Shown: positions 19,633-54,388 of the stretch, piece after piece
How the letters are laid out: each line of letters opens with the position of its first letter
Numbering within the stretch: position 1 is the first letter of the stretch
DNA from: Macrostomum lignano
Lineage: Eukaryota
DNA length: 64,000 bases
Assembly (NCBI GenBank): GCA_002269645.1
Contig: NIVC01003015.1
Location: forward strand, 61,257 to 125,256
Direction: 5' to 3'
Translations under genes and position numbers: made by a program
Notes under the pieces: model-generated
Database searches by the model: none
What the model was told of the DNA's origin: nothing
What the model saw: only the letters and a program-made list of their open reading frames with translations

Positions 19633-22600
19633 ATGCTTCAGTCGGGGCCGCTGCATTCAACGCATGGCGCTGCCACCTCGTCAGGCAAAGCGGCTGCGGC
19701 AGCCGCCGAGTCCGCCGATGTTGACCAGCCCGAGGATGCCCAGTCGGTGTCGCTGGTCACTTTATTGGCCCTGTCAAAGTTTCAAACTACCGAATCGGCT
19801 TTCGGTGGTAGGTTTCAGCAGCAGCAAGAGCAGCAGCAGCAGCAAAAGCAAATGCCAATGTCCGCTGTTGACCTTGACAACAGTTTGCTACGGCGTAGAT
19901 TAGCCGAGTCTCGCGAAGAGAATACCGAACTAGTTCGTCAGAATCATCAACTATTGACTAATTTGGAAAAGCTATCGTGGGAATTGTCGCGACTGCAGTC
20001 TCGAATGCGGAAACTCGATTTGGAGGCTAAGCAGGCTGGCTCTGCCAATGGCGTAGAGACTTACAAGGTTCGTGCGAGTGATAGTCTGTAGGGATGGAGG
20101 TTGAGAGTCTGTAGGGATGGAGGTTGAGAGTCTGTAGGGATGGAGGTTGAGAGTCTGTAGGAATGGAGGTTGAGAGTCTGTAGGGATGGAGGTTGAGAGT
20201 CTGTAGGGATGGAGGTTGAGAGTCTGTAGGGATGGAGGTTGAGAGTCTGTAGGAATGGAGGTTGAGAGTCTGTAGGGATGGAGGTTGAGAGTCTGTAGGG
20301 ATGGAGGTTGAGAGTCTGTAGGGATGGAGGTTGAGAGTCTGTAGGGATGGAGGTTGAGAGTCTGTAGGGATGGAGGTTGAGGGTCTGTAGGGATGGCGTT
20401 CGAGGGCCTGTAGGGATGGAAGTTGAGAGTCTGTAGAGACAGTTAAGAGTCTGTAGGGACGGAAGTTGAGAGTCTGTAGACAGTTGATAGTCTGTAGGGA
20501 CAGTTGAGAGTCTGTAGAGACAGTTGAGAGTCTGTAGGGACAGTTGAGAGTCTGTAGAGACAGTTGAGAGTCTGTAGGGACAGTTGAGAGTCTGTAGGGA
20601 TAGTTGAGAGTCTGTAGGGACAGTTGAGAGTCTGTAGGGACAGTTAAGAGTCTGTAGGGACAGTTGAGAGTCTGTAGGGACAGTTGAGAGTCTGTAGGGA
20701 CAGTTGAGAGTCTGTAGGGATAGTTGAGAGTCTGTAGGGATAGTTGAGAGTCTGTAGGGATAGTTGAGAGTCTGTAGGGACAGTTGAGAGTCTGTAGGGA
20801 TAGTTGAGAGTCTGTAGGGATAGTTGAGAGTCTGTAGGGACAGTTGAGAGTCTGTAGGGACAGTTGAGAGTCTGTAGGGACAGTTGAGAGTCTGTAGGGA
20901 CAGTTGAGAGTCTGTAGGGACGGGCTCTAAGAGACTATTGACAGATTTGACGGAGCAACGGACTATAGCAAACGATTCCTTCCCTAAACACCACCACTCA
21001 GGAGCAGCTGGACGAGCTGGAATGCCAAAACCGGAAGTTGAACCGCCAGCTAGATCAGACGGAGTCCGAATGGCGCGCCAAGCTTCAGCAGAGTCTGGAC
21101 GCCGCCGAGACGCTTCGCGTTGAAGCCCGCGAGCTTAGACTGAAAGCGGACCAATCTGACTGCGAACTGCGCATACTGCGAGATGAAGCCGACGCTACAG
21201 CTAAGGACCTGACGGAGCTGGCTGAGCTGCGGGCCCAGGTTTGTCCATTCATACAGTACGGGCTATATAAATATCTAATAGGGGGTTTTTATTCAGTCTA
21301 GCAATCCATTTCCCTAGGAAAGAACAAAGTGATTGATTTTCAGATGGGTTCCAGAATAAACCATATAAACTTTTTGGGATGGGAGGCTGGCCCAGCAACT
21401 GAGGATCTGGGAGGCTGGCCCAGCAACTGAGGATCTGGGAGGCTGGCCCAGCAACTGAGGATGTGGGAGGCTGGCCCAGCAACTGAGGATGTGGGAGGCT
21501 GGCCCAGCAACTGAGGATCTGGGAGGCTGGCCCAGCAACTGAGGATCTGGGAGGCTGGCCCAGCAACTGAGGATGTGGGAGGCTGGCCCAGCAACTGAGG
21601 ATGTGGGAGGCTGGCCCAGCAACTGAGGATGTGGGAGGCTGGCCCAGCAACTGAGGATGTGGGAGGCTGGCCCAGCAACTGAGGATCTGGGAGGCTGGCC
21701 CAGCAACTGAGGATCTGGGAGGCTGGCCCAGCAACTGAGGATCTGGGAGGCTGGCCCAGCAACTGAGGATCTGGGAGGCTGGCCCAGCAACTGAGGATCT
21801 GGGAGACTGGCCCAGCAACTGAGGATCTGGGAGGCTGGCCCAGCAACTGAAGATCTCAAGAAAGAGATCATCACAGTCGCACTAATCCCACCTCAGGTGG
21901 CGCACCTGAAGGAGCAGCTGTCGGGCAGAGACGCCGGCCGACAGGAGCTCGAGTCTCGCGTCTCGGGTCACGTCGCTGAGCAGGTCCGCCTGCGCCAGGC
22001 GCTCAGCCGCTCCGAAGCCACCGTCGGCCAGTTGCAGAGGCGCATCGGCGAGCTGGAGCGCCAGCTGGTGTCGGGCGACGCTGAGCGCACCGAGCTGGAG
22101 CGCCGCCTGGCGGAGGCGGCGGAGCTGCGCCAATCAGCCGACCGGCTGGCCGCTGAGCAAGCCAATTGCGTTCAACGCGAGACGCGCCGCGCCGACGAAG
22201 AGGTGGCGAAGCGGCTGGCGGTGGAGAAGCGATTGGAGGAGGCGCTGGCCAGCGACCAGTGCCGCGACCGCTACGAGGCCGAGGCCGGCCGGATGCGCGA
22301 CAAAGTCGACCGATTGAAGGCTCGCCTGGCCGAGCTGACCGCGGCCGGTGAACGGTCGGCCCAGGCGGCCGAGGCTGCTCGAGGTCGCGTCGAGTCCGAA
22401 CTGGGAGCCGCCGAGGGCCGATTAGCGGCTAAGGATGCTCGGATTGCCGAGCTGGAGGCTCAGGTAGGACGTTTGATGAGGTGAAACCGGCAAAGTGGAA
22501 TAACGAATTTTTAAGGCTACGGGCACCCTGGCGCAACGCCTTCGGCGACATCGTCCCGCACTCAACGCTGACGGCAATCCTGCTCATTCCGCTGACGCAG

Positions 22601-25600
22601 GAACGCACTCGCACACATGCTCACACAGGGTGTACAGCGGCCCTTGTGACTTTCTAATCGTCAGGCATGTACACTGACGTAGGGTCACTTTCTGATACAG
22701 GCGAATTTGTCTATGGCGAAACCCCATTCAGCGCTATGCGTCCTTCTACGCGTCCTTCAACTTCAGGTTGTCCATGCGTCTGGAAGCAAATCCAGAGCTA
22801 CAAGTTTCACATTACTTACATCTAGGATCATACGCTCGTAAATTTCTTTGTTTTCATGTTTTACTACAGTGTGTTTATAGTGTTAAATTGGTAGAACTTT
22901 CTGTGTAGAACGCATTTACATGCCTCAACCCAAACCATCTGAAAATTTTCTAATTTCAAAACTAAAAAAACTCGCTACTTGCCTACTCTATTAAGTAGTG
23001 TAGTTAGCGTTTTGTAATCGAAGGCGACTATATAATATTTGTCAGGTCGCATCTTCTTCCGCATTGGCCGACCAGCTGCGCCTGTGCGAGCGCCGATTGA
23101 AACGACGCGACACCGATTTAAAGCGCGCCTCGGCCAGCGTTGCTAAGGGCGACCAGCTGTTGGCTACGGCCGAAAATAAAATTGCTAAACTGCAGGCCGA
23201 GCTGGATGAGACGGCCAAGCTGGCTAGCCAGCGAGCTGACATGCTGGAGGCTGCGGAGGCTGCGGCTGAAGCGGTGAAGACTGAATTGCAGGTTAGTAAA
23301 GACTTAAGAGAAATTTATTTGATTGATAACTTTCATCGATTTTCCGCTGGTTTAATCGGAATCTTGAAAAAAATTTTGGATTAACGATTGTTATGCTGGA
23401 TTATCGATTCATCTATCGGATTATCGATTCTTCGAGCGGCTTGTTAATCCTTCTACCGGATCGTTAATCCCTTTTACCGGATCATTAATCCCTTCTACCG
23501 GATCTTTAATCCCTTCTTATTGGATTGTTAATCCCTTCTACCGGATCGTTAATCCCTTTTTACCGGATCTTTAATCCCTTTTTATTGGATTGTTATTCCC
23601 TTCTACCGGATCGTTAATCCCTTTTTACCGGATCTTTAATCCCTTCTTATTGGATTGTTAATCCCTTCTACCGGATCGTTAATCCCTTTTTACCGGATCT
23701 TTAATCCCTTCTTATTGGATTGTTAATCCCTTCTACCGGATCGTTAATCCCTTTTTATCGGATCTTTAATCCCTTCTTATTGGATTGTTAATACCTTCTA
23801 CCGGATCGTTAATCCCTTTTTACCGGATCTTTAATCCCTTTTTATTGGATTGTTAATACCTTCTACCGGATCGTTAATCCCTTTTTACCGGATCTTTAAT
23901 CCCTTTTTATTGGATTGTTATTCCCTTCTACCGGATCGTTAATCCCTTTTTACCGGATCTTTAATCCCTTCTTATTGGATTGTTAATACCTTCTACCGGA
24001 TCGTTAATCCCTTTTTACCGGATCTTTAATCCCTTCTTATTGGATTGTTAATCCCTTCTACCGGATCGTTAATCCCTTTTTATCGGATCTTTAATCCCTT
24101 CTTATTGGATTGTTAATACCTTCTACCGGATCGTTAATCCCTTTTTACCGGATCTTTAAATAATCCCTTCTTATTGGATTGTTAATCCCTTCTACCGGAT
24201 CGTTAATCCCTTTTTACCGGATCTTTAATCCCTTCTACCGGTTCGTTAATCCCTTTTACCAAATTCTACCGGGTTTTTAATTCCTCCCAGATTTTTAATC
24301 TCTCTTACTTACTGAATTAACAACCCTTCCTTCGGCTTAACTCCCATCTTCGTATTCCCAAATCCTCCACAGTCGGTCAGAGCGGCCGCGGCTGACGCTG
24401 ACCGCCGCCTAGCCGAGCTGGGCCGCGAGAACCGCGACCTTGGCCAGGCAGCCCGGACAGCCGAACGGAAATCGGCCGCCATCGAGGCCGAGCTTGGCCG
24501 GCTAGGCGAGGCGAGCCAGGCAGCCATGGCCGAGCTGGAATCCCGGGCCGACGCAGCCACCGGACGCGTGACAGAATTGGAGGAGGCGCTGACCGCCTGC
24601 CTGGCCGAGACAGCCAATTTGAAAGCAATTCACGACCGGACTGTCAGTCAGTTGGCCGATCGGGGCACCAAGTTGGCCGAGGCGGAGGCGGCTTTGAAGC
24701 AGGTGGGCTGCTAATCTGTCTATTGTTCTGTAGAAGTTCTATTGTACCTTCTAAGAAGCATAGCTGAGAGAGAACGGGTATAGGGTTCTCTGAGTCTATT
24801 GTCGGAGAGTGCTCTGAGTCTAGTGTCGGAGGGTTCTCTGAGTCTAGTGTCGGAGAGTTCTCTGAGTCTAGTGTCGGAGAGTTCTCTGAGTCTAGTGTCG
24901 GAAAGTGCTCTGAGTCTAGTGTCGGAGAGTTCTCTGAGTCTAGTGTCGGAGAGTGCTGTGAGTCTAGTGTCGGAGAGTGCTCTGAGTCTAGTGTCGGAGA
25001 GTTCTCTGAGTCTAGTGTCGGAGAGTGCTGTGAGTCTAGTGTCGGAGAGTGCTCTGAGTCTAGTGTCGGAGAGTGCTCTAAGTCTAGTGTCGGAGAGTGC
25101 TCTAAGTCTAGTGTCGGAGAGTTCTCTGAGTCTAGTGTCGGAGAGTTCTCTGAGTCTAGTGTCGGAGAGTTCTCTGAGTCTAGTGTCGGAGAGTGCTGTG
25201 AGTCTAGTGTCGGAGAGTGTGCTCTGAGTCTAGTGTCGGAGAGTTCTCTGAGTCTAGTGTCGGAGAGTTCTCTGAGTCTAGTGTCGGAGAGTTCTCTGAG
25301 TCTATTGTCGGAGAGTTCTCTGAGTCTAGTGTCGGAGAGTGCTGTGAGTCTAGTGTCGGAGAGTTCTCTGAGTCTAGTGTCGGAGAGTTCTCTGAGTCTA
25401 GTGTCGGAGAGTGCTGTGAGTCTAGTGTCGGAGAGTGCTCTGAGTCTAGTGTCGGAGAGTTCTCTGAGTCTAGTGTCGGAGAGTTCTCTGAGTCTAATGT
25501 CGGAGAGTGCTCTGAGTCTAGTGTCGGAGAGTGCTCTGAGTCTAGTGTCGGAGAGTGCTCTGAGTCTAGTGTCGGAGAGTGCTCTGAGTCTAGTGTCGGA

Positions 25601-27533
25601 CAGTCTTCGGGCACTTCAGTCACCCTGGCGCAATGTCTTCGGCGACATCGTCCTACGCAACTAGCGCTGGGGCAATTCTGCCCATTCCGCGGGTCCTGAG
25701 CACATACAAGCGCGACAACACTGCGCAGGCACGCACTCATGCACACGCGCACACAGTGTGCAGCGGCAGTGACTGTCTAATCGTCAAGCATGTACACTTT
25801 GTGCCTTTGGGGGGGGGGCTGGCCCTCATGGCTGTGAATCGCATGACAACCCTCTGGCCAATTGTCGTGCTCAAAAGCCCATAATGAAAGCGGCCTTACA
25901 GAGCCCTGTGTTTCTATAAAATCCCCAACTCGCCAATCCGAACCCGCGCAGAGCCAATCAGCGCTGCGCCAGTCCGAGGCCGATCGGGAGCGGCAGTCGG
26001 CGGAGATCCGCACCAGCCGGGCGCGCCAATCGGCGCTAGAAAACGAGCGCTCAGAATTGCAGGAGCAACTTGGCGAACGCGAATTGCAGCTGTGCTCAGA
26101 GCGAACCGCTCATCGTCAGGCTGAGCAGCAGCGATCGGCCCTTCAATCGGCTGTTCAACGATCGCAAACAGCGGCTGACGGTCTGCGCGGCCGGCTGCAG
26201 GAGTGCCAAGCTGAACTAGCCAGGCTGCAGGAGCGGGCGCTGGTCGCCGAGGACCGGCTGGCTCGCCAAGACGACGAGGCCAAGCTGGAGGCTCGGGCCC
26301 GCTCGGAGCTGGAGGCGAAACTTCGCGCCAGCCTGGACGATGCCGAGGAGAACCGACGCTGGGCCCGCCGGTCGGAGGAGCGAGTCGCCGAGCTGGAGAC
26401 CGAACGGTCGGCATTGAAAGGCCAGGCGGAGAAGCGGGAGAAAGCCCAGCGCGAATTGGAACGGCAACTGCGCTCGGCTGAGGATCAGGCGGCCAGATCT
26501 GCGACTGAGGCGCTGCAGGCAAGGCAGGAAGTTGAAACTCTGCAGCGGGAGGCCCAGCAGCTTGCAGCCAAGTACGAGCATTTTGATGTGTGCCCTGGCA
26601 TTTCAATATGCCATATCGCCACAAATATCCCATGTCCAAGTATCCCATGTCCAAATATCCCATGTCCAAATATCCCATGTCCAAATATCTCATGTCCAAA
26701 TATCCCATGTCCAAATATCCCATTTCTAAATATCCCATGTCCAAATATCCCATGTCCAAATATCCCATGTCCAAATATCCCATGTCCAAATATCCCATGT
26801 CCAAATATCCCATGTCCAAATATCCCATGTCCAAATATCCCATGTCCAAATATCCCATGTCCAAATATCCCATGTCCAAATATCCCATGTCCAAATATCC
26901 CATGTCCAAATATCCCATTTCTAAATATCCCATGTCCAAATATCCCATGTCCAAATATCCCATGTCCAAATATCCCATGTCCAAATATCCCATGTCCAAA
27001 TATCTCATGTCCAAATATCCCATGTCCAAATATCCCATGTCCAAATATCCCATGTCCAAATATCCCATGTCTAAATATCCCATGTTCAAATACCCCATTA
27101 TCCAACTTTCTCATCGTCCAAATATCCTAAAAATTCCGATTCTGCCGGCGCGCCCGCAGGCTGTCAGAGCAGGAGCAGTCGGGCCAAAAGCAGCGCAGCT
27201 CCGCCCAGGACTTGGCCGGCCAACTGGCCGAAGCGCGCGGCCAGCTGACGGCGGTCAACGAGCAACTTGCCGGCTGTCGAGATCGCCTGCGCGAGGCCGA
27301 GACGCGGCGCGAAGCCGAAGCCCGCCAGCACTCTGAAGAGACGGCTGGCCTGCGCGCCGAGCTGAAGGAAGCCAGGCGGCGAGCCAAGGCCGAGGCCGGC
27401 AAGTCGGCGACGCTGGAGTCCGCGGCTGGAGAGCGGGCCGACCTGCTGGCAGAGGCTGAGGCCAAGCTGAAGCACCTGAGCCAGGTGAGTGGGGTTTCAA
27501 GACTGTCTCTCTGTATGTCTGTCTGCCTGTCTT

Positions 27534-27623
<90 letters not shown>

Positions 27624-28944
27624 CATCTATCCATATATCCATATATCCATCTATCTATCTATCCATCTATCCGTCCATCCAACTATCCATCTATCCGTCT
27701 ATCCATCTATCTATCCATCTATCTATCTATCTATCTATCCATCTATCTATCTATCTATCCATCTATCCGTCTATCCATCTATCCATCTATCTATCCATCT
27801 ATCTATCTATTTATCTATCTATCTTTCTATCTATCTATCCATCTATCCGTCCATCCAACTATCCATCTATCCGTCCATCCAACTATCCATCTATCCGTCT
27901 ATCCATCTATCTATCTATCTATCTATCCATCTATCCGTCTATCTATCTATCCATCTATCTATCTATCCGTCTATCCATCTATATATCTATCTCTCCCCTT
28001 CAGGAGTACTCGAACGCCCGCCGGCGCGTCAAGGAGCTGACGGCCATTGTAGACGCTGCCCACGGCGAGCTGACTCAGAAGGAGGCGGACGTCGCCCGGC
28101 TAAGCAAGGCGGCCGAGTCAATGCTGGCCGAGCGGCGCCAGCTCTCAGACGAGCTGACCGCGGCCAAGTCGGCGCTGGCCCAGGCGGAGAGCCGGGCCGC
28201 GGCCGGGCACCGTCAAGCCCAGGCCGAGGCGGCGACTGAGCGTCAGCGTCGGGCCGACGAGCTTCGCAGAATTGAAGAGCGTCACTCGACTGAGGCGGCC
28301 GCGCTTCGTGCTCAGCTGGAGACGGCCAAGTCAGCCGCCGCCGAGTCGGCGAGGTGCTCAGCAGGGCTTATTAGTGCTTCTTTCTTAATTGCCATTCTAT
28401 ATGAGTAGTCAGTGTAGCGCATGAGAGAATCGCTCCTAACGCGTTTTAATTATATAGTCCCTAACTATTGTTCAAATGCTATTTTAGACAGTATAAAAAT
28501 CGCTCCTTAACCTCGCTCCTTCTCAAACGCCCTGAGAATCGCTCCTAAATCACCTGACAATCGCTTTTAAATCGCCCTGAGAATCGCCCATCTCACTACA
28601 AAATTCAAAGCACCGCTCTCCTCTTCTGCCTGCTCAGGGAGTTGCAAGCCGCTGAGAAGCGAGCCAGCTCATTGGAGCACGAAGTTCAAGTGCTGCACCA
28701 GGCCCTTGACGACGCCAATAATAGCCTGGTTGTCAGGGACGCTTCTGTCGCTAGGCTGGAAGCTCGAATTAATCGTTGCGGTCGAAGCTCGGTTGGCGCC
28801 GTGGCCGCGTCAGCCGCCGCGCTAGAACAGTCGACGACGGTCAGCAGCTCGCAGAAGGATTCGGCTGCCGCAGTGACATCTGCCGCATCTGACGAGTTGC
28901 GTCAATTGCTGGCGCAGATTGGCTCCGAAGGCGACGCGTTATGA
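19633..28944 (+). CDS. CCDC18: CCDC18-like long coiled-coil protein, 9 exons: 19633-20067, 21002-21238, 21897-22463, 23046-23291, 24373-24702, 25952-26571, 27160-27484, 28004-28353, 28638-28944 (1138 aa)
   Basis: All junctions are GT-AG and phase-consistent (3417 nt). [19 protein letters not shown] resembles CCDC18 LVTQNHSLMTKFESIHFEL, and [20 protein letters not shown] resembles AANEALLTKESELTRLQAKI (both from memory). The gene model is strong; orthology is moderate. Confidence 0.7.
20085..20920. repeat. 23-bp to 20-bp minisatellite (CCDC18-like intron 1)
   Basis: ttgagagtctgtagggatggagg grading into cagttgagagtctgtaggga. Confidence 0.9.
21378..21852 (-). repeat. 28-bp minisatellite family, locus 1 (CCDC18-like intron 2)
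   Basis: Unit ggctggcccagcaactgaggatctggga is the reverse complement of the arrays at 36.7 and 38.3 kb. Confidence 0.92.
22521..22680 (-). mobile_element. SINE family A, 3' fragment (CCDC18-like intron 3)
   Basis: Reverse complement contains gtgtacatgcctgac...gccgctgtacaccctgtgtgag and the cagggtgc tail. Confidence 0.7.
23450..24270. repeat. 21/22-bp minisatellite with a ~65-bp three-unit higher-order repeat (intron 4)
   Basis: Cycle of ttaatcccttctaccggatcg / ttaatccctttttaccggatct / ttaatcccttcttattggattg. Confidence 0.9.
24790..25600. repeat. 24-bp minisatellite (intron 5)
   Basis: Unit tctgagtctagtgtcggagagttc. Confidence 0.92.
25608..25862 (-). mobile_element. SINE family A, headless copy (intron 5)
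   Basis: Reverse complement matches the body of the 14.7 and 46.5 kb copies (aattggcc...gattcacagccatgag...ggcacaaagtgtacatg...gcggaatgggc). Confidence 0.75.
26615..27095. repeat. 15-bp minisatellite (intron 6)
   Basis: Unit aaatatcccatgtcc. Confidence 0.93.
27535..27990. repeat. (TATC)n microsatellite (intron 7)
   Basis: Long TATC/CATC run ending at the acceptor cccttcag (28003). Confidence 0.93.
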
Positions 28945-29654
28945 TTTTAACTGCTCGTAATTTTTTTCTTTTTCTGTCTAGCCTGAAATTAGGCAAAAAA
29001 GCTTTTTCGCTACTTTTAGTAGCTTTCGCGAGTATAACTTTTTGCAAAATCCATTGGCTGGATCAGTGGAACTCTGCCTTCGTTTTCGTAAAATTCGTAG
29101 CTAGCATTGTTTTATATATATGATAGAGATTATCAGTTCCGATCGTTATTTAGCTTTCTTTCAGATTCTTTCTGTATATTGAATAGTGGGCTCGCCTCAT
29201 TCCTGGGAGTGGTTTAGCTGGCTCTACTAAAGCAGTTATATTGTGATATGCATGAGCCTCTATTGGTTGCCTTTTTGTTATTACTTTTTGAGAGCAGAAA
29301 ATTCATTCGTTTTTTTTCTGAAACACCGTCCAATTTGAATTTTGTTGTTTTGTTATCTTCTTTTCAGATGCAATTTTTCTAGTAGCCTAGTAGTTGCTGC
29401 TAATACTCTTGTGTTTTACACGTAACTTACAGGTTAGCCTCTTGTTAGTTATAATACTCACTCACTGTCTTGTGTATTCATTTCCAAATGTTTAGTACCA
29501 TTTATTTAATAGCATTTTTGTAACCTCTAAAAACAATGAACTGAGACATTCCTTTTAATAAATACATATGCGTGTATATTGATTATAGACTTGCTAGGAT
29601 ACTTAACTTGTAATATGTACGTGTATTAATATTCAAGATATCGCAAACCTACCC

Positions 29655-30092
29655 CTGAATGTACCCACTCTCCAGACCAACCTTTCTACCCCCTAATGTA
29701 CACACTCTCCAGACCAACTTCTCTACCCCTAATGTACACTCTCTCCAGACCAACTTCTCTACCCCCTAATGTACACTCTCTACAGACGAACCTCTCTATC
29801 CCTAATGTACACTCTCTCCAGACCAACTTCTCTACCCCCTAATGTACACTCTCTACAGACGAACCTCTCTACCCCTAATGTACACACTCCAGACCAACCT
29901 CTCTACCCCTAATGTACACACTCCAGACCAACCTCTCTACCCCTAATGTACACACTCCAGACCAACCTCTCTACCCCTAATGTACACACTCCAGACCAAC
30001 CTCTCTACCCCTAATGTACACACTCCAGACCAACCTCTCTACCCCTAATGTACACACTCTCCAGATCAACCTCTCTACCCCTAATGTACGCA
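29655..30092. repeat. 34-bp minisatellite upstream of ATF4
   Basis: Unit ccctaatgtacacactccagaccaacctctctac. Confidence 0.9.
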
Positions 30093-30179
30093 CTCTTAGG
30101 AACAAGCCCTTTAATTCGTATAATTTAATAAAATCGCGCATCAAACTATGCATAGTTTCCCACGCCACCCATTGCTGCC

Positions 30180-30188
30180 ATGGAATAG
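30180..30188 (+). promoter_or_regulatory. ATF4 uORF1 (ATG GAA TAG)
   Basis: gccATGGaatag: two codons plus stop in strong Kozak context, about 60 nt downstream of a TATA-like tataatttaataaaa (~30119). Confidence 0.75.
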
Positions 30189-30302
30189 TCAATCGCCGCC
30201 AGCTCCCCAAGCTAAACGCACTCCGGTGCAGCCGTACAAACCAAGCAAAAAATTCTTCTTTCGCTAAATCAGCGCAGGCTCCGAGCCTTTCAACAAGCCA
30301 AG

Positions 30303-30512
30303 ATGGCGTCCTTTACGATCTATCAATCGATATCTTCAATTCAACAGTACCAGCTGTTAGAATACCAACCAATATCTTTTATATTGCCAATAGTATCTGA
30401 CCAGAAAGAACAGCAGTTTGTCAGCCATGCTAGAATTGCTGCTACAACAGGCGGACGCGGGGTTTTCCACCGCGCCAGCGGCTCCGCCTTCGACTGTCGT
30501 CGACGCTGCTGA
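30303..30512 (+). promoter_or_regulatory. ATF4 inhibitory uORF2 (69 aa) overlapping the main ORF out of frame
   Basis: aagATGG Kozak context. Overlaps ATG 30427 by 86 nt in another frame. No other ATG between uORF1 and the main start. Confidence 0.75.
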
Positions 30513-31233
30513 TTTCTTCAGCAGCGCCGGGGGCGTCGGAGGCGTCGGCTGGCCAGCGGAGCTTGCCTGCGGTGGTGCGGAGTTCGAATCGGGAGCGGAG
30601 GCGACGGACGACGCAGAATTTGATGCTTTTATTGAGACGCTTCAACTGCCGGTCATTGAGCCGACGATCGCTCTGATTGAAGCCGATGCTTCGGCTGACG
30701 ATCAACAAGTCGACGAGTTGCTGCTGCAACAGCTGCTCAGTCCCGAAGACGACTGCTTGATGCTGCACCTGCTGGACGGCGCTGAACCCTCCACCGTCGG
30801 TGTTGAAACTTTAGAGGAGGACAGCGCATCGTCGAGTCCGCCTATGAGCTACTCGACAACGACAATGCAGTCGCCGAATTCGCCGAGTCCATCAACGGTG
30901 TCGTCGCGATCCTCGGCGGCATCGACGAAATCGTCCAAGATGTCGAAGAAGCCAAAGTCCGATCAGCCAGTGGCTTCGGGCGGCGGCGGCCGAGTGCAGA
31001 AGAAGAAGGAGGCCAACCGGGAGGCGGCCTATCGCTACCGGTTGAAGCAGCGACTCGGCGATTCCGTTGTCGATCAGCAGCGCAGCGAACTACAATCGAG
31101 CGTCGACGCCCTAGCTAACCGGGTTAAAGCGGCGGAAACCGAAGCTCGATTTCTAGTTAGCATGTGTCGCCAAATTTTCTCAAGCCGTCGGCAATTATCG
31201 CTGCGCCAGCAGCAGCAGCAGCTTAGTGTCTAG
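30427..31233 (+). CDS. ATF4: ATF4/ATF5-like bZIP transcription factor (268 aa, intronless CDS)
   Basis: C-terminal basic region KKKEANREAAYRYRLKQR plus zipper ending EARFLVSMC resembles ATF4 (KKMEQNKTAATRYRQKKR...EIQYLKDL). Acidic N-terminus, a DSASSSP..SY degron-like segment and the diagnostic uORF layout. Confidence 0.8.
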   Translation: MLELLLQQADAGFSTAPAAPPSTVVDAADFFSSAGGVGGVGWPAELACGGAEFESGAEATDDAEFDAFIETLQLPVIEPTIALIEADASADDQQVDELLLQQLLSPEDDCLMLHLLDGAEPSTVGVETLEEDSASSSPPMSYSTTTMQSPNSPSPSTVSSRSSAASTKSSKMSKKPKSDQPVASGGGGRVQKKKEANREAAYRYRLKQRLGDSVVDQQRSELQSSVDALANRVKAAETEARFLVSMCRQIFSSRRQLSLRQQQQQLSV

Positions 31234-32064
31234 GGCCTTATCCAGTTATTTCATTAAAAATAATACAATAAATGTGCGCTTAACTCTACTGATAGTAAAA
31301 ATGCGCACATTTTTAACTTAAAATTTGAGTTGCCGTTTTAAGGCTTGGAGAAAATTTGGACGTCAATGCTTTAACAATTAAAAATATCAATAAACTTCTT
31401 TTGCGTCTCCCCCCCCCCAGCTCTTGCTCCGAACTTCTCTGCACCGTTTGGTTTTGTCTCCGTCGTGTCGCTTTTGCGTTAACGTTGCTGGTTACTGTTG
31501 CTTTAACATACTTTAATCATATATAAGCATCACTAAATTGTTTTATTATCCTTGATTATACTTACTATCAAAAAGCTTTGGTGTGGTCTTATTTGTTTTT
31601 GTAACCAACCAATCTTGCTGGATTTGTTTTTTAGGGTAAGTTTTTTCTCTCTTTGAAAATTCTTTTTCTCAACAGTACATTCTGTACTTTAATATAAATA
31701 TGTATATTAATTCATACACGTTTATGTGAAGTAGTTATTTACGGTCTGCCGTGCGTCCGCTAAAGAAACAAGCCCTATATTTAAATTTTAGCACACTGTG
31801 CGATCCTTGGAGGCGTCTGTCTTATTCAAGCCTCAAATTATTTATTAAATACGCTATTAAATATCTAGACTGGTACTATTAACTGGCTTCTCTTTTGTTT
31901 GTTTGTTCTTCAATTCTATTCTCTCCTGCAAGAGCACTACTGCACTACTATAAAAACACTGTAGGCGTCTTTTGCGGTTAAACATCTTTTGGATCAATAA
32001 AAATATACGTGCCAGTCCTGAACCCACGCGACTGCGGCTTCTTGTGTTGCTTTTTTGCTAATAT

Positions 32065-33735
32065 TTCTGGAGGTATGCTGGTAATAGACAGGTTTCTGTA
32101 GGTATGCTGGTCATAGACAGGTTTCTGTAGGTAGGCTGGTCATAGACATGTTTATAATAGCAGGCTGGTCATAGACAGGTTTATGGAGGTATGCTGATCA
32201 TAGACAGGTTTCTGTAGGTAGGCTGGTCATAGACAGGTTTCTGAAAGCAGGCTGGTCATAGACAGGTTTCTGTAGGTATGCTGGTCATAGACAGGTTTCT
32301 GCAGGTATGCTGGTCAAAGACATGTTTATAATAGCAGGCTGGTCATAGACAGGTTTATAGAGGCAGGTTGGTCAAAGACAGGTTTATGGACGTAGGCTGG
32401 TCATAGACAGGTTTCTGTAGGTAGGCTGGTCATAGACAGGTTTCTGTAGGTAGGCTGGTCATAGACAGGTTTCTGTAGGTAGGCTGGTCATAGACAGGTT
32501 TCTGCAGGTATGCTGGTCATAGACAGGTTTCTGTAGGTAGGCTGGTCATAGACAGGTTTCTGTAGGTAGGCTGGTCATAGACAGGTTTCTGAAAGCAGGC
32601 TGGTCATAGACAGGCTTATGGAGGTAGGCTGGTCAAAGACAGGTTTCTGTAGGCAGGCTGGTCATAGACAGGTTTCTGAAAGCAGGCTGGTCATAGACAG
32701 GTTTCTAGAGGTAGGCTGGTCATAGACAGGTTTCTGTAGGTAGACTGGTCATAGACAGATTTCTGTAGGTATGCTGGTCATAGACAGGTTTCTGCAGGTA
32801 TGCTGGTCATAGACATGTTTATAATAGCAGGCTGGTCATAGACAGGTTTATGGAGGTAGGCTGGTCATAGACAGGTTTCTGGAGGTAGGCTGGTCATAGA
32901 CAGGTTTCTGAAAGCAGGCTGGTCATAGACAGGCTTATGGAGGTAGGCTGGTCAAAGACAGGTTTCTGTAGGCAGGCTGGTCATAGACAGGTTTCTGAAA
33001 GCAGGCTGGTCATAGACAGGTTTCTAGAGGTAGGCTGGTCATAGACAGGTTTCTGTAGGTAGACTGGTCATAGACAGGTTTCTGCAGGTATGCTGGTCAT
33101 AGACATGTTTATAATAGCTGGCTGGTCATAGACAGGTTTATGGAGGTAGGCTGGTCATAGACAGGTTTCTGGAGGTAGGCTGGTCATAGACAGGTTTCTG
33201 AAAGCAGGCTGTTCATAGACAGGTTTATGAAGGTATGCTGGTCATAGACAGGTTTCTGCAGGTATGCTGGTCATAGACAGGTTTCTGCAGGTATGCTGGT
33301 CATAGACAGGTTTCTGTAGGTAGGCTGGTCAAAGACAGGTTTCTGTAGGTAGGCTGGTCATAGACAGGTTTCTATTGATAGGCTGGTCATAGACAGGTTT
33401 TTGTAGGTAGGCTGGTCATAGACAGGTTTCTGTTGGTAGGCTGGTCGTAGACACGTTTATGGAGGTAGGCTGGTCATAGACAGGTTTCTATTGATAGGCT
33501 GGTCATAGACAGGTTTCTGTAGGTATGCTGGTCATAGACAGGTTTCTGCAGGTATGCTGGTCAAAGACATGTTTATAATAGCAGGCTGGTCATAGACAGG
33601 TTTCTGTTGGTAGGCTGGTCGTCGACACGTTTATGGAGGTAGGCTGGTCATAGACAGGTTTCTGAAAGCAGGCTGGTCATAGACAGGTTTCTGAAAGCAG
33701 GCTGGTCATAGACAGGTTTCTAGAGGTAGGCTGGT
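32065..33735. repeat. 29-bp minisatellite in a predicted GLCE 5'UTR intron (31636-33899)
   Basis: Unit tcatagacaggtttctgtaggtaggctgg; largest array in the window; bracketed by GTAAGT and ctcgcAG. Confidence 0.9.
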
Positions 33736-33940
33736 TAAAGAAAGGTTCTGATGGTTCTGGTCATTGACAGGTTTTGGTCTATAACTCAGGTGTTAACTAA
33801 TATTTCTTCACGAGAAGGAAACCATACTACTAATTGAATTGACTTGTTAAGTAGCAAACACCGTTTCTTGTATCTATATTTTTGTTACTTCACTCGCAGA
33901 CTTGAATTGGCTCAGTCGGCGTGCTTGCGTGCGGGGACAC

Positions 33941-36562
33941 ATGAAGCTTCTGCCGCACCGACGGCTGGCCAGTCCGCGCCGCCTGCTGATCTTGCTGTGC
34001 CTGGCCCTGTCCATTGTGCTGGCCTATTATTTGCTATCGGCTCCAGCGGCTGACAAGGCTGCATTTGTTTATAAAGAGACTGCAGCGGATAAAGAGCCAA
34101 CTAAGATGCTAACGACTGTTTTGGCTCGGCCTCAGCCGGTCGCCGCTGTCCCCCAGTCGGCAGTAAAAGTCACGGATATCGACTGTCTAATTGAAGACAC
34201 CGAACAGGTGGCCTGCATTCGCCGCGGCGCCGATGTCTACGTGCCGTTCGACTATTTGAAACGGCGCTACGAGCTGTCCGGCGGCCTGTCGGAGGACGGC
34301 CGTCAGCTGCACTGGTACGCCAGCTATGCCAGGCTGCACCGGCCCAGTCTGCCCTATTCGCCCTATGGCGCTTTCTTACACTTTGCCGACTATACGGTTG
34401 AACGGCGAGAACGGGTACTGCGAGTGTCCGGCAGGCGCGGCGTCCCAATCAGCCGGCAATGGGATCCGCGCGGGCACGAATACGTTATACAGGTGGCCCA
34501 GTACGGCCTGAGCCATTTCAGCAAGGCTAGCATCGAGACTGAGACAAGACGGAGGGAAAACAGTAACGGTAATAATAATAATAATGATAGTGATGAGGAC
34601 AGCGACGAATTTGCGGCTACGAGATCGTTCGGCGAGGCTGCCACCGACTGGACGGTGCCAGACGGTGCTCAGCTGACTGAACTGACCGGCAACGCCACGG
34701 CCAGGGTCTCTCCGCCGCCTCCGCCGGCGGCACAACAGCAGCGACATTCAACTGCCTCACTGCTTCGTTTCAACGTGCCGGCCGATTTGTCACGCGGCGC
34801 CCGACTAAAACTGGCCCGCGATTCGCCCACCTCGTCCGGTCGGACAGTGCTCCGTCTGGTTGACTTCCTGTCCGTGTCGGCCGCCAGCGTCACCGTCCAG
34901 ATGACGACGAACCGGCGCGGCACCGTCCGGCTGCACTACGGAGTCGGCTATGCCGAGGATTACCGAGCGCCTGGCGACCGATCCGACATCTATTTCGCCA
35001 TCGGCTCGCCCGGCGACGGCTGGCGAACCGTCACTCGCAACCTGCGCGTCGATCTGGAGAAAGCCTTTGAAGATGACGATGACGACAGCGAAGAGGTGGC
35101 CGCCGTTGGCAGCGTCGACATCGGCGCCGCGGATGAGGACGAAAGCGTCGCTGGCGTCGAAGACCGTCAACGTCGGAATAGAAAGTCGCGCGGTCGCGGA
35201 CGCGGTCGCGGACGCAGCCGTCGGGGTACTCGTCGACGGCCCGGCCGAGGTCGCCGACGTCAGCGCAACAACGAAGGCGACGGCGGCGGCGGCAACCGCA
35301 ACCGTCCGGTTGCCATTCGTCGGGTTCAGTGGATCTCCCTGCGCGGCGTCGGTTACCTCGGCCGGGTGGAATTCGCCACCGCGGCCGCTGCCCGTCCGGA
35401 TTTCTATCGGGCAGCCGGCGACTGGCTGGTGGCCAATCAGAACGCCAGCACCGGGGCCTGGCCGATCTGGGCTAGGCGGGCCATCGGCAGCAGACGGGAT
35501 CGGAGGCGGCTGGTGAGTTCGGGATTGCACCCTGACAGCTGACACACTAGACCCATGCCTACCTGTCACCTGACACACTAGACCCATGACCTACCTGTCA
35601 CCTGACACACTAGACCCATGACCTACCTGACAGCTGACACACTAGACCCATGACCTACCTGACAGCTGACACACTAGACCCATGACCTACCTGACAGCTG
35701 ACACACTAGACCCATGACCTACCTGACAGCTGACACACTAGACCCATGACCTACCTGACAGCTGACACACTAGACCCATGACCCACCTGACAGCTGACAC
35801 ACTAGACCCATGACCTACCTGACAGCTGACACACTAGACCCATGACCTACCTGACAGCTGACACACTAGACCATGACCTACCTGAACCCTGACACACGAG
35901 TCCTCCCAACCTGCCACAACCTGCGCCAGGTGCTGCAGCCGGGCTGGTGCTCTGCCATGGGCCAGGGCCAGGCCATCTCCCTGCTAGTCCGGCTGCACCG
36001 TCACTGGCCAGACCGGAGCGACTACCTCGCAGCAGCTGTCCGCGGCCTGGCGCCATTCCACCGCGACGCCGCCTCGGACAGCACAGCCGGAGTAGCGGCC
36101 CGCCTATTCAACCAGTTCACCTGGTACGAAGAGTACCCTGTACCTGGCGGCCTGTTTGTTCTCAACGGTTTTGTCTATTCTCTGTTCGGCCTGTACGACC
36201 TCCGACAACTGCTGACTGACTTGACGGCCAAACAGAATGGCAGCAGCAGCAGCAGCAGTCAGCAGCTGATCGACGGTGCGTCACTGCACTCTCACCTGGC
36301 CAATGTGTCCCGGCTCTACTCAACCGGCATGGAGTCGCTTAAGTCCGTCATCGGCCTGTTTGATCACGGCGACGGTACTTACTACGATTTGCGTCACGTG
36401 ACCAATCCAACTGAGGAGCCGCGCCGGGCCAGGTGGGATTATCACGGCGTTCACGTGACCCAGCTGATGGCGCTCACTACACTGGAGCCGGATCCCAGAC
36501 TGCTGGCCGCGCTGGACAGATGGGAGAAATATCTGAACGGCTATAGAGTGTCGCATAACTGA
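33941..36562 (+). CDS. GLCE: D-glucuronyl C5-epimerase (heparan sulfate), 2 exons: 33941-35512, 35930-36562 (734 aa)
   Basis: Type II signal anchor; YVPFDYLKRRYE, FADYTVERRERV, GVPISRQWDPRG, IQVAQYGLSHFS, GWCSAMGQGQAIS, WYEEYP, FVLNGFVYSLFGLYDL, YYDLRH, ARWDYH, YRVSHN*. Catalytic Glu/Tyr positions are conserved. Confidence 0.95.
35530..35885. repeat. 32-bp minisatellite (GLCE intron)
   Basis: Unit actagacccatgacctacctgacagctgacac. Confidence 0.92.
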
Positions 36563-49087: not shown

Positions 49088-50335
49088 GAAAGAGCTACTA
49101 GTAGTGACTTCACACAGGCTACTAGTAGTGACTTCACAGAGGCTACCAGGAGTGACTTCACACAGGCTACTAGTAGTGACTTCACACAGGCTACTAGTAG
49201 TGACTTCACAGAGGCTACCAGGAGTGACTTCACACAGGCTACTAGTAGTGACTTCACACAGGCTACCAGGAGTGACTTCACACAGGCTATCAGTAGTGAC
49301 TTCACACAGGCTACTTGTAGTGACTTCACACAGGCTACTAGTAGTGACTTCACACAGGCTACTAGTAGTGACTTCACACAGGCTACCAGTAGTGACTTCA
49401 CACAGGCTACTAGTTGTGACTTCACACAGGCTACTAGTTGTGACTTCACACAGGCTACTAGTAGTGACTTCACACAGGCTATCAGTAGTGACTTCACACA
49501 GGCTATCAGTAGTGACTTCACACAGGCTATCAGTAGTGACTTCACACAGGCTATCAGTAGTGAATTCACACAGGCTACCAGGAGTGACTTCACACAGGCT
49601 ACTAGTTGTGACTTCACACAGGCTACTAGTTGTGACTTCACACAGGCTACTAGTTGTGACTTCACACAGGCTACTAGTTGTGACTTCACACAGGCTACTA
49701 GTTGTGACTTCACACAGGCTATCAGTAGTGACTTCACACAGGCTATCAGTAGTGACTTCACACAGGCTATCAGTAGTGACTTCACACAGGCTATCAGTAG
49801 TGACTTCACACAGGCTACCAGTAGTGACTTCACACAGGCTACTAGTTGTGACTTCACACAGGCTACTAGTTGTGACTTCACACAGGCTACTAGTTGTGAC
49901 TTCACACAGGCTACTAGTTGTGACTTCACACAGGCTATCAGTAGTGACTTCACACAGGCTATCAGTAGTGACTTCACACAGGCTATCAGTAGTGACTTCA
50001 CACAGGCTATCAGTAGTGACTTCACACAGGCTACCAGTAGTGACTTCACACAGGCTACTAGTTGTGACTTCACACAGGCTACTAGTTGTGACTTCACACA
50101 GGCTACTAGTTGTGACTTCACACAGGCTACTAGTTGTGACTTCACACAGGCTACTAGTTGTGACTTCACACAGGCTATCAGTAGTGACTTAACACAGGCT
50201 ATCAGTAGTGACTTCACACAGGCTATCAGTAGTGACTTAACACAGGCTATCAGTAGTGACTTCACACAGGCTACCAGTAGTGACTTCACACAGGCTACTA
50301 GTTGTGACTTCACACAGGCTACCAGTAGTGACTTC
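49088..50335. repeat. 24-bp minisatellite (~52 units) upstream of the IL-17-like gene
   Basis: Unit gtagtgacttcacacaggctacta; explains ORFs 48991..50313, 49037..50347 and 49062..50192. Confidence 0.93.

Positions 50336-53627: not shown

Positions 53628-54388
<761 letters not shown>

What the first reader, a model, noticed from the sequence alone, without database searches (positions are those of the whole stretch)
30180..31233. Complete ATF4-type delayed-reinitiation switch (uORF1 plus overlapping uORF2)
A 2-codon uORF1 (ATG GAA TAG) is followed by an ATG-free spacer of 114 nt. uORF2 (69 aa, strong Kozak) then overlaps the bZIP start out of frame by 86 nt, and there is no other ATG in this leader. 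This is the arrangement that makes mammalian ATF4/ATF5 translation depend on eIF2-alpha phosphorylation; in mouse Atf4 it is a 3-aa uORF1 and a ~59-aa overlapping uORF2. It predicts a conserved integrated stress response output here, relevant to starvation and regeneration. An extra ATG at 30148 may lie at or upstream of the TSS.
Basis: partly seen in the sequence, partly recalled or inferred. Interest (0 to 1): 0.75.

Follow-up and report, generated by a model that had tools for sequence, protein, structure and literature searches.

The report
Flatworm ATF4 gene with stress-switch uORFs
The leader of a Macrostomum lignano ATF4-family transcription factor gene carries the same two upstream reading frames that make ATF4 translation stress-inducible in mammals, and related flatworms keep them in their mature mRNAs, so this is a real but expected new example of a known switch.

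Summary
uORF1 (ATG GAA TAG) lies at 30180-30188 and is followed by a 114-nt ATG-free spacer. uORF2 (69 codons, gccaagATGg) lies at 30303-30512 and overlaps the 268-codon main ORF (30427-31233) by 86 nt, out of frame.

The window is Macrostomum lignano (NIVC01003015.1). The main ORF is a very divergent ATF4/crc-family bZIP.

Only two other species in the databases have close homologues, both as about 1.1-kb transcript contigs. Both transcripts begin with the flatworm spliced leader joined 2 nt upstream of the uORF1 ATG. Both keep a 2-codon uORF1, a 111-119 nt spacer, an identical uORF2 start context (AGCCAAGATGGC) and a 77-86 nt overlap in the same relative frame. This holds although synonymous sites are saturated. 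Trans-splicing therefore does not remove the uORFs.

Three amendments are needed:
- The spliced leader adds a further weak-context AUG 5 nt upstream of uORF1.
- M. lignano has no AG at that junction. The window has CTG there and the paralogues have ATG, so its own 5' end is undetermined.
- Dependence on eIF2-alpha phosphorylation is inferred, not shown.

This is a new member of a known kind and of moderate-to-low interest.

The parts
29649..30095 (+). Minisatellite (34-nt unit, about 12.6 copies) directly upstream of the gene. It bounds the possible core promoter to about 85 nt.
   Evidence: Tandem Repeats Finder. The array is also present upstream of paralogues L001 and L008.
30119..30133 (+). 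AT-rich TATA-like element (TATAATTTAATAAAA). It is a possible core promoter if the M. lignano mRNA is not trans-spliced. This is inference only.
   Evidence: Sequence reading. No transcript data are available for M. lignano.
30148..30150 (+). Upstream ATG (39-codon ORF ending at 30267). It lies 5' of the position that corresponds to the first exon base in the relatives' mRNAs, so it is probably not in the mature leader.
   Evidence: An AG at 30154-30155 is the nearest upstream candidate acceptor.
30175..30177 (+). CTG at exactly the position occupied by the spliced-leader AUG in the relatives' mRNAs. It is ATG in paralogues L001 and L008. The genome has no AG acceptor here (TTGCTG|CC).
   Evidence: Alignment A1. 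Spliced-leader sequence and acceptor motif [T/C]TNCAG are from PMC8629364.
30180..30188 (+). uORF1, two codons (ATG GAA TAG) with G at -3 and G at +4. It is the inferred reinitiation-permissive uORF.
   Evidence: Conserved as ATG GAT TAA and ATG GAG TAG, 2 nt after the spliced leader, in two other species.
30189..30302 (+). ATG-free spacer of 114 nt between uORF1 and uORF2. This is the scanning interval in which the ternary complex is reacquired.
   Evidence: The spacer is 119 nt in species A and 111 nt in species B, and 118 nt in the paralogue L008 (measured); L001 carries the same 4-nt insertion. The one extra ATG in species B is in frame with uORF2.
30217..30229 (+). Conserved 13-nt block CGCACnnCGGTGC inside the spacer. 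It could form a 4-bp hairpin with loop UCCG, CUCG or UUCG. Its function is unknown.
   Evidence: 11 of 13 positions are invariant in three species. Folding energy is not better than shuffles (z -0.3 to -1.3).
30296..30307 (+). Invariant uORF2 start context AGCCAAGATGGC.
   Evidence: 12 of 12 identical in three species despite saturated synonymous sites.
30303..30512 (+). uORF2, 69 codons. It overlaps the main ORF by 86 nt in the -1 frame relative to the main ORF. It is the inferred inhibitory uORF.
   Evidence: Homologous uORF2s have 64 and 60 codons and overlap by 86 and 77 nt in the same relative frame. The peptides are only 26-35% identical.
30427..31233 (+). Main ORF of 268 codons in a single exon, encoding an ATF4/crc-family bZIP protein. 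One sequence (P0001) is encoded by two M. lignano contigs: the window's (NIVC01003015.1, L002) and NIVC01000138.1 (L001). A third copy (L008) encodes the 269-aa P0004 = PAA47951.1, BOX15_Mlig008443g2.
30991..31179 (+). Basic region and leucine zipper (residues about 189-251): RVQKKKEANREAAYRYRLKQR followed by heptads V, L, L, A, L, I.
   Evidence: Pfam bZIP_2 scores 21 bits, just under its 22.3 cut-off. The best PDB match is ATF-4 chain 1ci6_A. hhalign gives 98.6% against an ATF4/crc profile.
31267..31272 (+). AATAAA, the likely polyadenylation signal, 34 nt after the stop codon.
   Evidence: Sequence reading only.

Best explanation
The region is the 5' leader and coding exon of a Macrostomum lignano ATF4/crc-family bZIP gene. 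Its translation is most likely controlled by ATF4-type delayed reinitiation.

The proposed sequence of events is as follows. Ribosomes translate the 5'-proximal two-codon uORF1, and the 40S subunit stays on the mRNA and resumes scanning. When the eIF2-GTP-Met-tRNAi ternary complex is abundant, the 40S is recharged within the 114-nt spacer and initiates at the strong uORF2 AUG. It then terminates 86 nt past the bZIP start, so the main ORF is missed. When eIF2-alpha is phosphorylated, recharging is slower. Many subunits pass the uORF2 AUG and initiate at the main AUG 124 nt further on.

Shown here: the sequence architecture, its conservation, its presence in mature spliced-leader-bearing mRNAs of two related species, and the ATF4-family identity of the protein.

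Inferred: the position of the M. lignano 5' end, the reinitiation behaviour of uORF1, and the dependence on eIF2-alpha phosphorylation.
For: - Architecture: exact coordinates are confirmed.
- Origin: the window is 100% identical to M. lignano NIVC01003015.1. Two paralogous copies keep both uORFs.
- Homologous transcripts: four Logan contigs from four sequencing runs represent two species, with 47% and 39-42% protein identity to the window protein. They start with 16-23 nt of the M. lignano spliced leader, whose sequence is confirmed in PMC8629364. The leader is fused directly to CCATGGA(T/G)TA(A/G). The contigs then show a 111-119 nt spacer, an identical AGCCAAGATGGC, uORF2s of 64 and 60 codons overlapping the main ATG by 86 and 77 nt, and the same relative frame.
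- Extra ATGs: every extra ATG downstream of uORF1 in those leaders is in frame with uORF2.
- Selective conservation: synonymous sites are saturated (43-46% third-position identity), while both uORF start regions are invariant.
- Protein identity: the best PDB hit is ATF-4. In a search of 1.84 billion representatives, the best hits outside the three close-homologue clusters (the window protein and its two homologues) are mostly ATF4/crc-type proteins with C-terminal RKKEQNK(N/T)AATRYR. They include entries named 'bZIP transcription factor crc' and 'atf-4'. hhalign gives 98.6%.
- Wider occurrence: two more distant ATF4-like genes (L010, L012) have the same logic of a short uORF, a spacer, and an overlapping uORF2 of 62-71 codons.
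- Reference system: the human ATF4 leader has a uORF1 of 3 sense codons and a 60-codon uORF2 overlapping in the -1 frame (PMC11058473).
Against: - No M. lignano transcript could be retrieved. The M. lignano genome lacks an AG at the junction used by the relatives (TTGCTG or TTGATG before CCATGG). The 5' end in this species is therefore unknown.
- In the relatives the spliced leader adds an AUG (tattgcATGc, weak context). It opens a uORF0 of 21-28 codons that overlaps uORF1 out of frame. In the paralogues L001 and L008 a genomic ATG at that place is in frame with uORF2 (113 codons in L008; L001 carries the same ATG and 4-nt insertion). The leader is thus more complicated than a clean two-uORF switch.
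- Chance probability for a single leader is only about 1%.
- No functional data exist. I found no paper describing ATF4 uORFs in flatworms.
Confidence: 0.72

Rival explanations
1. The uORFs are real and conserved but act as a constitutive translational damper or an mRNA-stability (NMD) element. They keep the level of the bZIP protein low without coupling it to eIF2-alpha phosphorylation.
For: Nothing tested here concerns eIF2-alpha. An overlapping uORF with a strong start is repressive by itself. Recent work on human ATF4 shows that the simple delayed-reinitiation model is incomplete (PMC11058473).
Against: Pure repression does not need the specific pairing seen here: a minimal 5'-proximal uORF, a spacer of about 110-120 nt free of out-of-frame ATGs, and an overlapping uORF. 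That pairing is conserved in three species plus two distant ATF4-like genes. It is also the arrangement that confers stress induction in ATF4 homologues elsewhere.
Confidence: 0.15
2. In M. lignano itself the mature leader differs from the genomic reading. One possibility is trans-splicing at a downstream AG, for example after 30203 or 30232. That would remove uORF1, and the spliced-leader AUG would then open a substitute short uORF. Another possibility is a start site far upstream that includes the ATG at 30148.
For: About 30% of M. lignano genes are trans-spliced (PMC8629364) and the homologues are. The M. lignano genome has no AG at the homologous junction. Several AGs lie within the spacer.
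Against: None of the AGs in the leader matches the [T/C]TNCAG acceptor motif. CCATGGAATAG is retained in all three M. lignano copies and in both relatives. The nearest upstream AG (30154-30155) would keep both uORFs and would put the spliced-leader AUG in frame with the uORF1 stop, giving an 11-codon uORF.
Confidence: 0.1
3. uORF2 matters mainly through its encoded 60-69 residue peptide, or through a nascent-peptide stall, rather than through its position.
For: The N-terminal residues are partly shared (MA..YQ; 26-35% identity). The relative frame is kept across indels.
Against: Peptide identity is low, and 8 positions are invariant across the three peptides. Much of the conserved nucleotide sequence around the start is the initiation context. 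The C-terminal part is dictated by the overlapping bZIP frame. The uORF2 peptide has no Pfam match.
Confidence: 0.05
4. The arrangement is a chance configuration of ATGs in a GC-moderate leader.
For: 1.3% of shuffled leaders reproduce the pattern.
Against: The same arrangement, with invariant start contexts, is found in two other species at saturated synonymous divergence and in two distant ATF4-like genes.
Confidence: 0.02

Closest known systems
Mammalian ATF4 (and ATF5) 5' leader: uORF1 plus overlapping uORF2, delayed translation reinitiation under eIF2-alpha phosphorylation (Vattem and Wek 2004; Lu, Harding and Ron 2004; described in PMC11058473)
   Same: Both have a minimal 5'-proximal uORF: 2 codons here, 3 sense codons in human and mouse. 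Both have a strong-context uORF2 of about 60-70 codons that overlaps the main start in the -1 frame. Both have an inter-uORF spacer of roughly 100 nt. In both, the downstream ORF is an ATF4-family bZIP with the domain at the extreme C-terminus.
   Different: The protein is extremely divergent: Pfam bZIP_2 falls just below its threshold, and the basic region reads NREAAYRYRLKQR rather than NKTAATRYRQKKR. uORF1 has one fewer sense codon, and its penultimate codon is GAN rather than the GCG common in ATF4 uORF1s (PMC13554125). No conserved stem-loop in the overlap could be shown. The homologous mRNAs are spliced-leader trans-spliced, which adds a leader-borne AUG. There is no start-stop uORF0 of the human kind.
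Invertebrate ATF4 orthologues with uORF control: Drosophila crc (ATF4) and C. elegans atf-4 (own knowledge; Drosophila use of the ATF4 leader in PMC13554125)
   Same: The family is the same: the best database hits include proteins named crc or atf-4. The principle of uORF-gated translation of the single invertebrate ATF4/5 orthologue is also the same.
   Different: These are different phyla. The number and lengths of the uORFs differ. None of those systems is described as having the uORF1 AUG 2 nt from a spliced-leader junction.
Yeast GCN4 (four uORFs, delayed reinitiation)
   Same: The logic is the same: a reinitiation-permissive first uORF, then an inhibitory downstream uORF that is bypassed when the ternary complex is scarce.
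   Different: The GCN4 inhibitory uORFs do not overlap the main ORF. There are four short uORFs and a much longer leader.
Flatworm spliced-leader trans-splicing with a leader ending in AUG (M. lignano 35-nt leader, PMC8629364)
   Same: The homologous mRNAs carry this leader. Its terminal AUG sits in the leader of the mature mRNA.
   Different: Here the leader AUG is out of frame with uORF1 and 5 nt upstream of it, forming AUGCCAUGG. The window's genomic copy has CTG at that position and no AG acceptor.

Membership tests
ATF4/ATF5/crc subfamily of bZIP transcription factors | A bZIP domain (basic region plus leucine zipper) at the extreme C-terminus | tested here: met
   The basic region and six heptads (V, L, L, A, L, I) span residues about 189-251 of 268. 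Pfam bZIP_2 gives E = 3.6e-4 and 21 bits, just under its 22.3 cut-off. hhalign gives 98.6% to an ATF4/crc profile.
ATF4/ATF5/crc subfamily of bZIP transcription factors | ATF4-type basic-region signature N-x2-A-A-x-R-Y-R-x-K, with Tyr where most bZIPs have Cys or Ser, and closest relatives that are ATF4 proteins | tested here: met
   The window has NREAAYRYRLKQR. The only bZIP among the PDB profile hits is ATF-4 chain 1ci6_A (E = 0.012). Most of the best non-self hits among 1.84 billion representatives carry NK(N/T)AATRYR, and some are named crc or atf-4. E-values are modest (7e-8 to 1e-3). Orthology, as opposed to family membership, was not tested by phylogeny.
ATF4/ATF5/crc subfamily of bZIP transcription factors | A beta-TrCP phosphodegron (DSGxxxS) upstream of the bZIP | tested here: inconclusive
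   The window has DSASSSPPMSYS in the Ser/Pro-rich region that aligns with ATF4/crc proteins (profile positions about 125-190). The motif is not a canonical DSG and is not conserved in species B. The resemblance to the human degron is from memory only.
ATF4-type delayed-reinitiation leader | A very short (3 codons or fewer) 5'-proximal uORF1 | tested here: met
   ATG GAA TAG at 30180-30188. It has two codons in all three species.
ATF4-type delayed-reinitiation leader | A last uORF that overlaps the main ORF start out of frame and has a good initiation context | tested here: met
   uORF2 runs 30303-30512 and overlaps by 86 nt, with A at -3 and G at +4. The homologues overlap by 86 and 77 nt with an identical 12-nt start context.
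ATF4-type delayed-reinitiation leader | Both uORFs present in the mature mRNA | tested here: inconclusive
   This is met in the transcripts of two related species, where the spliced leader is joined 2 nt upstream of uORF1. For M. lignano itself no transcript was found, and the genome lacks an AG at that junction.
ATF4-type delayed-reinitiation leader | No competing out-of-frame AUGs between uORF1 and the main AUG | tested here: met
   The window has none. The extra ATGs in species A and species B are both in frame with uORF2. Upstream of uORF1 the spliced-leader AUG (relatives) or a genomic ATG (paralogues) adds a weak-context uORF0.
ATF4-type delayed-reinitiation leader | Main-ORF translation induced by eIF2-alpha phosphorylation, dependent on uORF1 and repressed by uORF2 | not testable with these tools
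   This needs reporters, ribosome profiling or western blots under stress.

The most novel reading that the evidence does not exclude
In macrostomid flatworms the ATF4 switch may be built onto the trans-splice site. The spliced leader's own terminal AUG and the uORF1 AUG form a conserved overlapping pair (AUGCCAUGG). Trans-splicing would then create a third, weak-context uORF0 of 21-30 codons that competes with the reinitiation-permissive uORF1. That would set how many ribosomes enter the stress-sensitive pathway.

M. lignano may have hard-wired this module into the genome. The acceptor AG is gone, the paralogues have ATG at the spliced-leader AUG position, and the window has the near-cognate CTG. 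This could have happened by decay of a TTGCAG acceptor or by retroposition of a trans-spliced mRNA that left a relic of the leader's 3' end (ATTG-ATG versus ATTGCATG).
Probability: 0.12. Interest if true: 0.55.

Novelty: new member of a known kind. Interest (0 to 1): 0.35.

Why it matters
The finding extends the ATF4 two-uORF arrangement to Platyhelminthes. The flatworm protein is so divergent that Pfam does not call its bZIP, yet the leader logic is better conserved than most of the coding sequence. That argues translational gating is an ancient, strongly selected property of this gene.

M. lignano is transgenic-tractable and regenerates. The leader could therefore serve as a ready-made in vivo reporter of the integrated stress response during starvation, regeneration and stem-cell dynamics.

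The placement of uORF1 2 nt from a spliced-leader junction is a small new twist. It raises the question of how a leader-borne AUG interacts with reinitiation control.

For specialists in translational control the core result is expected rather than surprising.

Tried and rejected
1. M. lignano transcripts. An exact-protein look-up of the main ORF returned only genomic contigs. The uORF2 peptide is not on record. The gene identifier and the SRR run numbers occur in no paper searched. The trans-splicing paper has no supplementary files held as text.

2. More homologues. A second search with the three-sequence profile found no further close relatives, so the cross-species test rests on two other species of unknown name.

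3. Conserved RNA structure.
- The invariant CGCACnnCGGTGC block folds into only a 4-bp hairpin that is no better than shuffles.
- RNAalifold on the uORF2/main-ORF overlap gave a weak consensus (-11 kcal/mol, positive covariation term, many broken pairs). No analogue of the human SL3 stem-loop can be claimed.
- Rfam found nothing in the window.

4. Spliced-leader relic or retrogene idea. An alignment of the leader anchored at the junction to the upstream genomic sequence scores at the 1.5% tail of random window positions for L001. The window's own value in that call was computed one base off register, so it is not used. This is too weak to claim. A mutated TTGCAG acceptor explains the same bases equally well. 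No spliced-leader-like sequence occurs elsewhere in the window.

5. L009, a contig of another ATF4-like protein, appears to be unspliced or intron-containing, with many ATGs. It was not informative.

6. The sigma-70 promoter and terminator scan was not used because it does not apply to a eukaryote.
Full report
**What is in the sequence.**
- uORF1 is ATG GAA TAG at 30180-30188, in the context gctgccATGg.
- The next ATG on the + strand is at 30303, so the spacer is 114 nt.
- That ATG (gccaagATGg) opens a 69-codon ORF ending at 30512.
- The long ORF starts at 30427 (tcagccATGc) and ends at 31233 (268 codons).
- The overlap is 86 nt, and the main ATG lies 124 nt after the uORF2 ATG (frame +1).
- The only further upstream ATG near the gene is at 30148. 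It opens a 39-codon ORF ending at 30267.

A 34-nt minisatellite (29649-30095) lies immediately upstream. The stop codon of the preceding gene is at 28944.

**Where it comes from.**
The 268-aa product is encoded exactly on two Macrostomum lignano contigs of assembly GCA_002269645.1.
- The window is 100% identical to NIVC01003015.1 (L002).
- A third copy (L008, NIVC01004280.1) encodes the 269-aa PAA47951.1, BOX15_Mlig008443g2. UniRef labels it 'BZIP domain-containing protein'.
- The copies are 93-95% identical over the whole locus, consistent with the known duplicated genome.

**What the protein is.**
- Pfam gives only a sub-threshold bZIP_2 match: 21 bits against a 22.3 cut-off, residues 192-239.
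- A profile of the three close homologues finds ATF-4 (1ci6_A) as the only bZIP among PDB sequences (E = 0.012). The alignment is KKKEANREAAYRYRLKQR against KKMEQNKTAATRYRQKKR.
- The same profile was searched with HMMER against 1.84 billion representatives. It finds three close-homologue clusters (the window protein and its two homologues), then 62 hits between E = 7e-8 and 1e-3.
- Most of these hits carry the ATF4 signature RKKEQNK(N/T)AATRYR at the extreme C-terminus. They include proteins named 'bZIP transcription factor crc' and 'cyclic AMP-dependent transcription factor atf-4' from Haematobia.
- Profile-profile comparison with 15 of these hits gives 98.6% probability over 79 columns.
- I conclude that the gene is a very divergent member of the ATF4/ATF5/crc family. 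Orthology was not tested by a tree.

**The decisive evidence: homologous transcripts.**
Only two other protein clusters in 5.8 billion sequences are close relatives. P0002 has 47% identity. P0003 and P0005 have 39-42% identity. Both come from Logan assemblies of sequencing runs, as contigs of about 1.1 kb.

Four of the five contigs, from four runs and two species, begin with 16-23 nt of ...TGCGAAGACTCAATTTATTGCATG. This is the 3' part of the 35-nt M. lignano spliced leader CGGTCTCTTACTGCGAAGACTCAATTTATTGCATG (PMC8629364). The fifth contig (L007) starts further downstream and does not reach the leader. The leader is joined directly to CCATGGATTAA in species A or CCATGGAGTAG in species B.

The homologous mRNAs are therefore trans-spliced. 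The junction corresponds to window 30177|30178, 2 nt upstream of the uORF1 ATG.

Downstream, both species have the following features.
- A two-codon uORF1 (MD* in species A, ME* in species B).
- A spacer of 119 nt (species A) or 111 nt (species B).
- The identical 12-mer AGCCAAGATGGC at the uORF2 start.
- A uORF2 of 64 or 60 codons that overlaps the main ATG by 86 or 77 nt.
- The same relative frame as in the window.

In species B the true main start is the ATG at L006:253 (MLELL..., matching the window's MLELL...). It is not the GTG that the gene caller chose.

Each of the two leaders has one extra ATG downstream of uORF1, and both are in frame with uORF2. They therefore do not change the logic.

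**Is this more than chance?**
- A single leader reproduces the pattern in 1.3% of dinucleotide shuffles, which is modest.
- Between the three species, third-codon-position identity is only 43-46% and four-fold-site identity is 40-62%. Neutral sites are saturated.
- The leader as a whole is 50-57% identical.
- It nevertheless contains fully conserved islands exactly at CCATGGA.TA (uORF1), at CGCACnnCGGTGC in the spacer, and at AGCCAAGATGGC (uORF2 start).
- Conservation is thus concentrated on the two uORF start sites, which is what selection on the switch predicts.
- Two more distant ATF4-like genes share the GRV.KKESN...RYR basic region with the Macrostomum protein (P0061 on L010; P0033 on L011 and L012). 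They also show uORFs of 3-5 codons and a spacer of about 90-106 nt. A uORF2 of 62-71 codons (aaaaATGGC) then overlaps the main ATG in the same relative frame.

1. The mature leaders of the relatives contain one more AUG: the spliced leader's own terminal AUG, 5 nt upstream of the uORF1 AUG (AUGCCAUGG).
   - Its context is weak (U at -3, C at +4).
   - It opens a uORF0 of 21 codons (species A) or 28 codons (species B) that overlaps uORF1 out of frame and ends before uORF2.
   - In species B its stop overlaps an ATG that is in frame with uORF2 (TAATGA).
2. The M. lignano genome has no AG at the homologous junction.
   - The window and L002 read TTGCTG|CCATGG. The paralogues L001 and L008 read TTGATG|CCATGG.
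   - The window thus has the near-cognate CTG (30175-30177) exactly where the relatives' mRNAs have the spliced-leader AUG, and the paralogues have a genomic ATG there.
   - The paralogues also carry a 4-nt insertion in the spacer. In L008 this puts that ATG in frame with uORF2, giving a 113-codon ORF. L001 carries the same ATG and the same insertion.
3. The M. lignano mRNA therefore either starts at its own promoter or is trans-spliced at another AG.
   - A TATA-like TATAATTTAATAAAA lies at 30119-30133. That would put a start site near 30150 and leave the ATG at 30148 at or before the cap.
   - The nearest upstream AG is at 30154-30155. It is a poor match to the [T/C]TNCAG acceptor motif.
   - Use of that AG would put the spliced-leader AUG in frame with the uORF1 stop, giving an 11-codon uORF1.
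   - Both options keep uORF1 and uORF2.
   - I could not retrieve any M. lignano transcript to decide between them.

**Mechanism.**
The best-supported explanation is ATF4-type delayed reinitiation.
- uORF1 is the shortest possible uORF that still has an elongation step, and it has a strong context. It should therefore be translated by most scanning ribosomes and allow 40S retention. This follows from established knowledge of short uORFs and of ATF4 and GCN4.
- The 114-nt spacer sets the time available to reacquire the ternary complex.
- The strong uORF2 start captures recharged subunits and carries them 86 nt past the bZIP start.
- With eIF2-alpha phosphorylated, subunits recharge later and use the main AUG, 124 nt beyond the uORF2 AUG.
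- The human reference has a uORF1 of 3 sense codons and a 60-codon uORF2 overlapping in the -1 frame (PMC11058473). Here uORF2 is likewise in the -1 frame relative to the main ORF.
- All steps after the architecture are inferred.

**Comparison with what is known, and novelty.**
- The two-uORF control of ATF4 is textbook for mammals and is used experimentally in Drosophila (PMC13554125).
- I found no paper describing it in flatworms.
- The differences from the mammalian leader are set out under 'closest known'. Briefly, uORF1 is one sense codon shorter, no conserved stem-loop was found in the overlap, there is no start-stop uORF0, and the protein is far more divergent.
- The placement of uORF1 at a spliced-leader junction, with a leader-borne AUG, is new as far as I can see.
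- This is a new member of a known kind. Its practical value is as a candidate stress reporter in a transgenic regenerating flatworm.

**What did not work.**
The dead ends are described under 'tried and rejected'. The main gap they leave is that no M. lignano transcript was found, so the 5' end in this species remains open.

Noticed in passing
window 30170-30179; L001 and L008 at the homologous place (L008:2740-2752): The genomic bases just upstream of CCATGG read ATTGCTG in the window and ATTGATG in the paralogues. They resemble both the 3' end of the spliced leader (ATTGCATG) and a mutated trans-splice acceptor (TTGCAG). This could be a relic of a retroposed trans-spliced mRNA or a decayed acceptor. 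An anchored alignment to the leader is only at the 1.5% tail for L001; the window's own value in that call was computed one base off register.
   Followed up: partly
L001:about 9790-9800 and L008:2810-2830 versus window 30250-30260: The type-B paralogues carry a 4-nt insertion (ATTC) in the uORF1-uORF2 spacer, which is 118 nt in L008 (measured there only). In L008 it puts the extra upstream ATG in frame with uORF2, giving a 113-codon overlapping ORF; L001 has the same ATG and insertion. The copies of one genome may therefore be regulated differently.
   Followed up: partly
window 30217-30229: A 13-nt block CGCACnnCGGTGC in the spacer is invariant in three species except for two loop positions (UCCG, CUCG, UUCG). 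It could form a small tetraloop hairpin, but this is not thermodynamically significant. Its function is unknown.
   Followed up: partly
L006:106-110 (also L007:58-62): In species B the stop of the uORF0 opened by the spliced-leader AUG overlaps an ATG (TAATGA) that is in frame with uORF2. This is a UAAUG stop-start overlap of the kind that can favour termination-reinitiation.
   Followed up: no
L010:151-366 and L012:1438-1626: Two unnamed, more distant ATF4-like genes from Logan runs ERR3687831 and SRR30952581 have uORF2s that begin MAPKM and overlap the main ATG in the same relative frame. They share CAGCACAGATGT at the main start. The organisms are unknown.
   Followed up: partly
window 1-64000, for example 29649-30095, 32064-33774, 49094-50335, 53630-54387: The window is packed with dozens of unrelated minisatellite arrays. 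Units are 15-75 nt with 10-60 copies, and there are also AGAC and TGTC microsatellites. Two arrays flank the ATF4-like gene. Rfam finds no RNA gene in the window.
   Followed up: no
window about 20427-28944 (+) and about 33941-36562 (+): The neighbouring genes are on the same strand. Upstream, a 1138-residue product with no Pfam hit ends at 28944. Downstream lies a 734-residue protein resembling glucuronyl C5-epimerase (PF21174, PF06662). The spacings of 1.2 kb and 2.7 kb do not suggest an operon.
   Followed up: no
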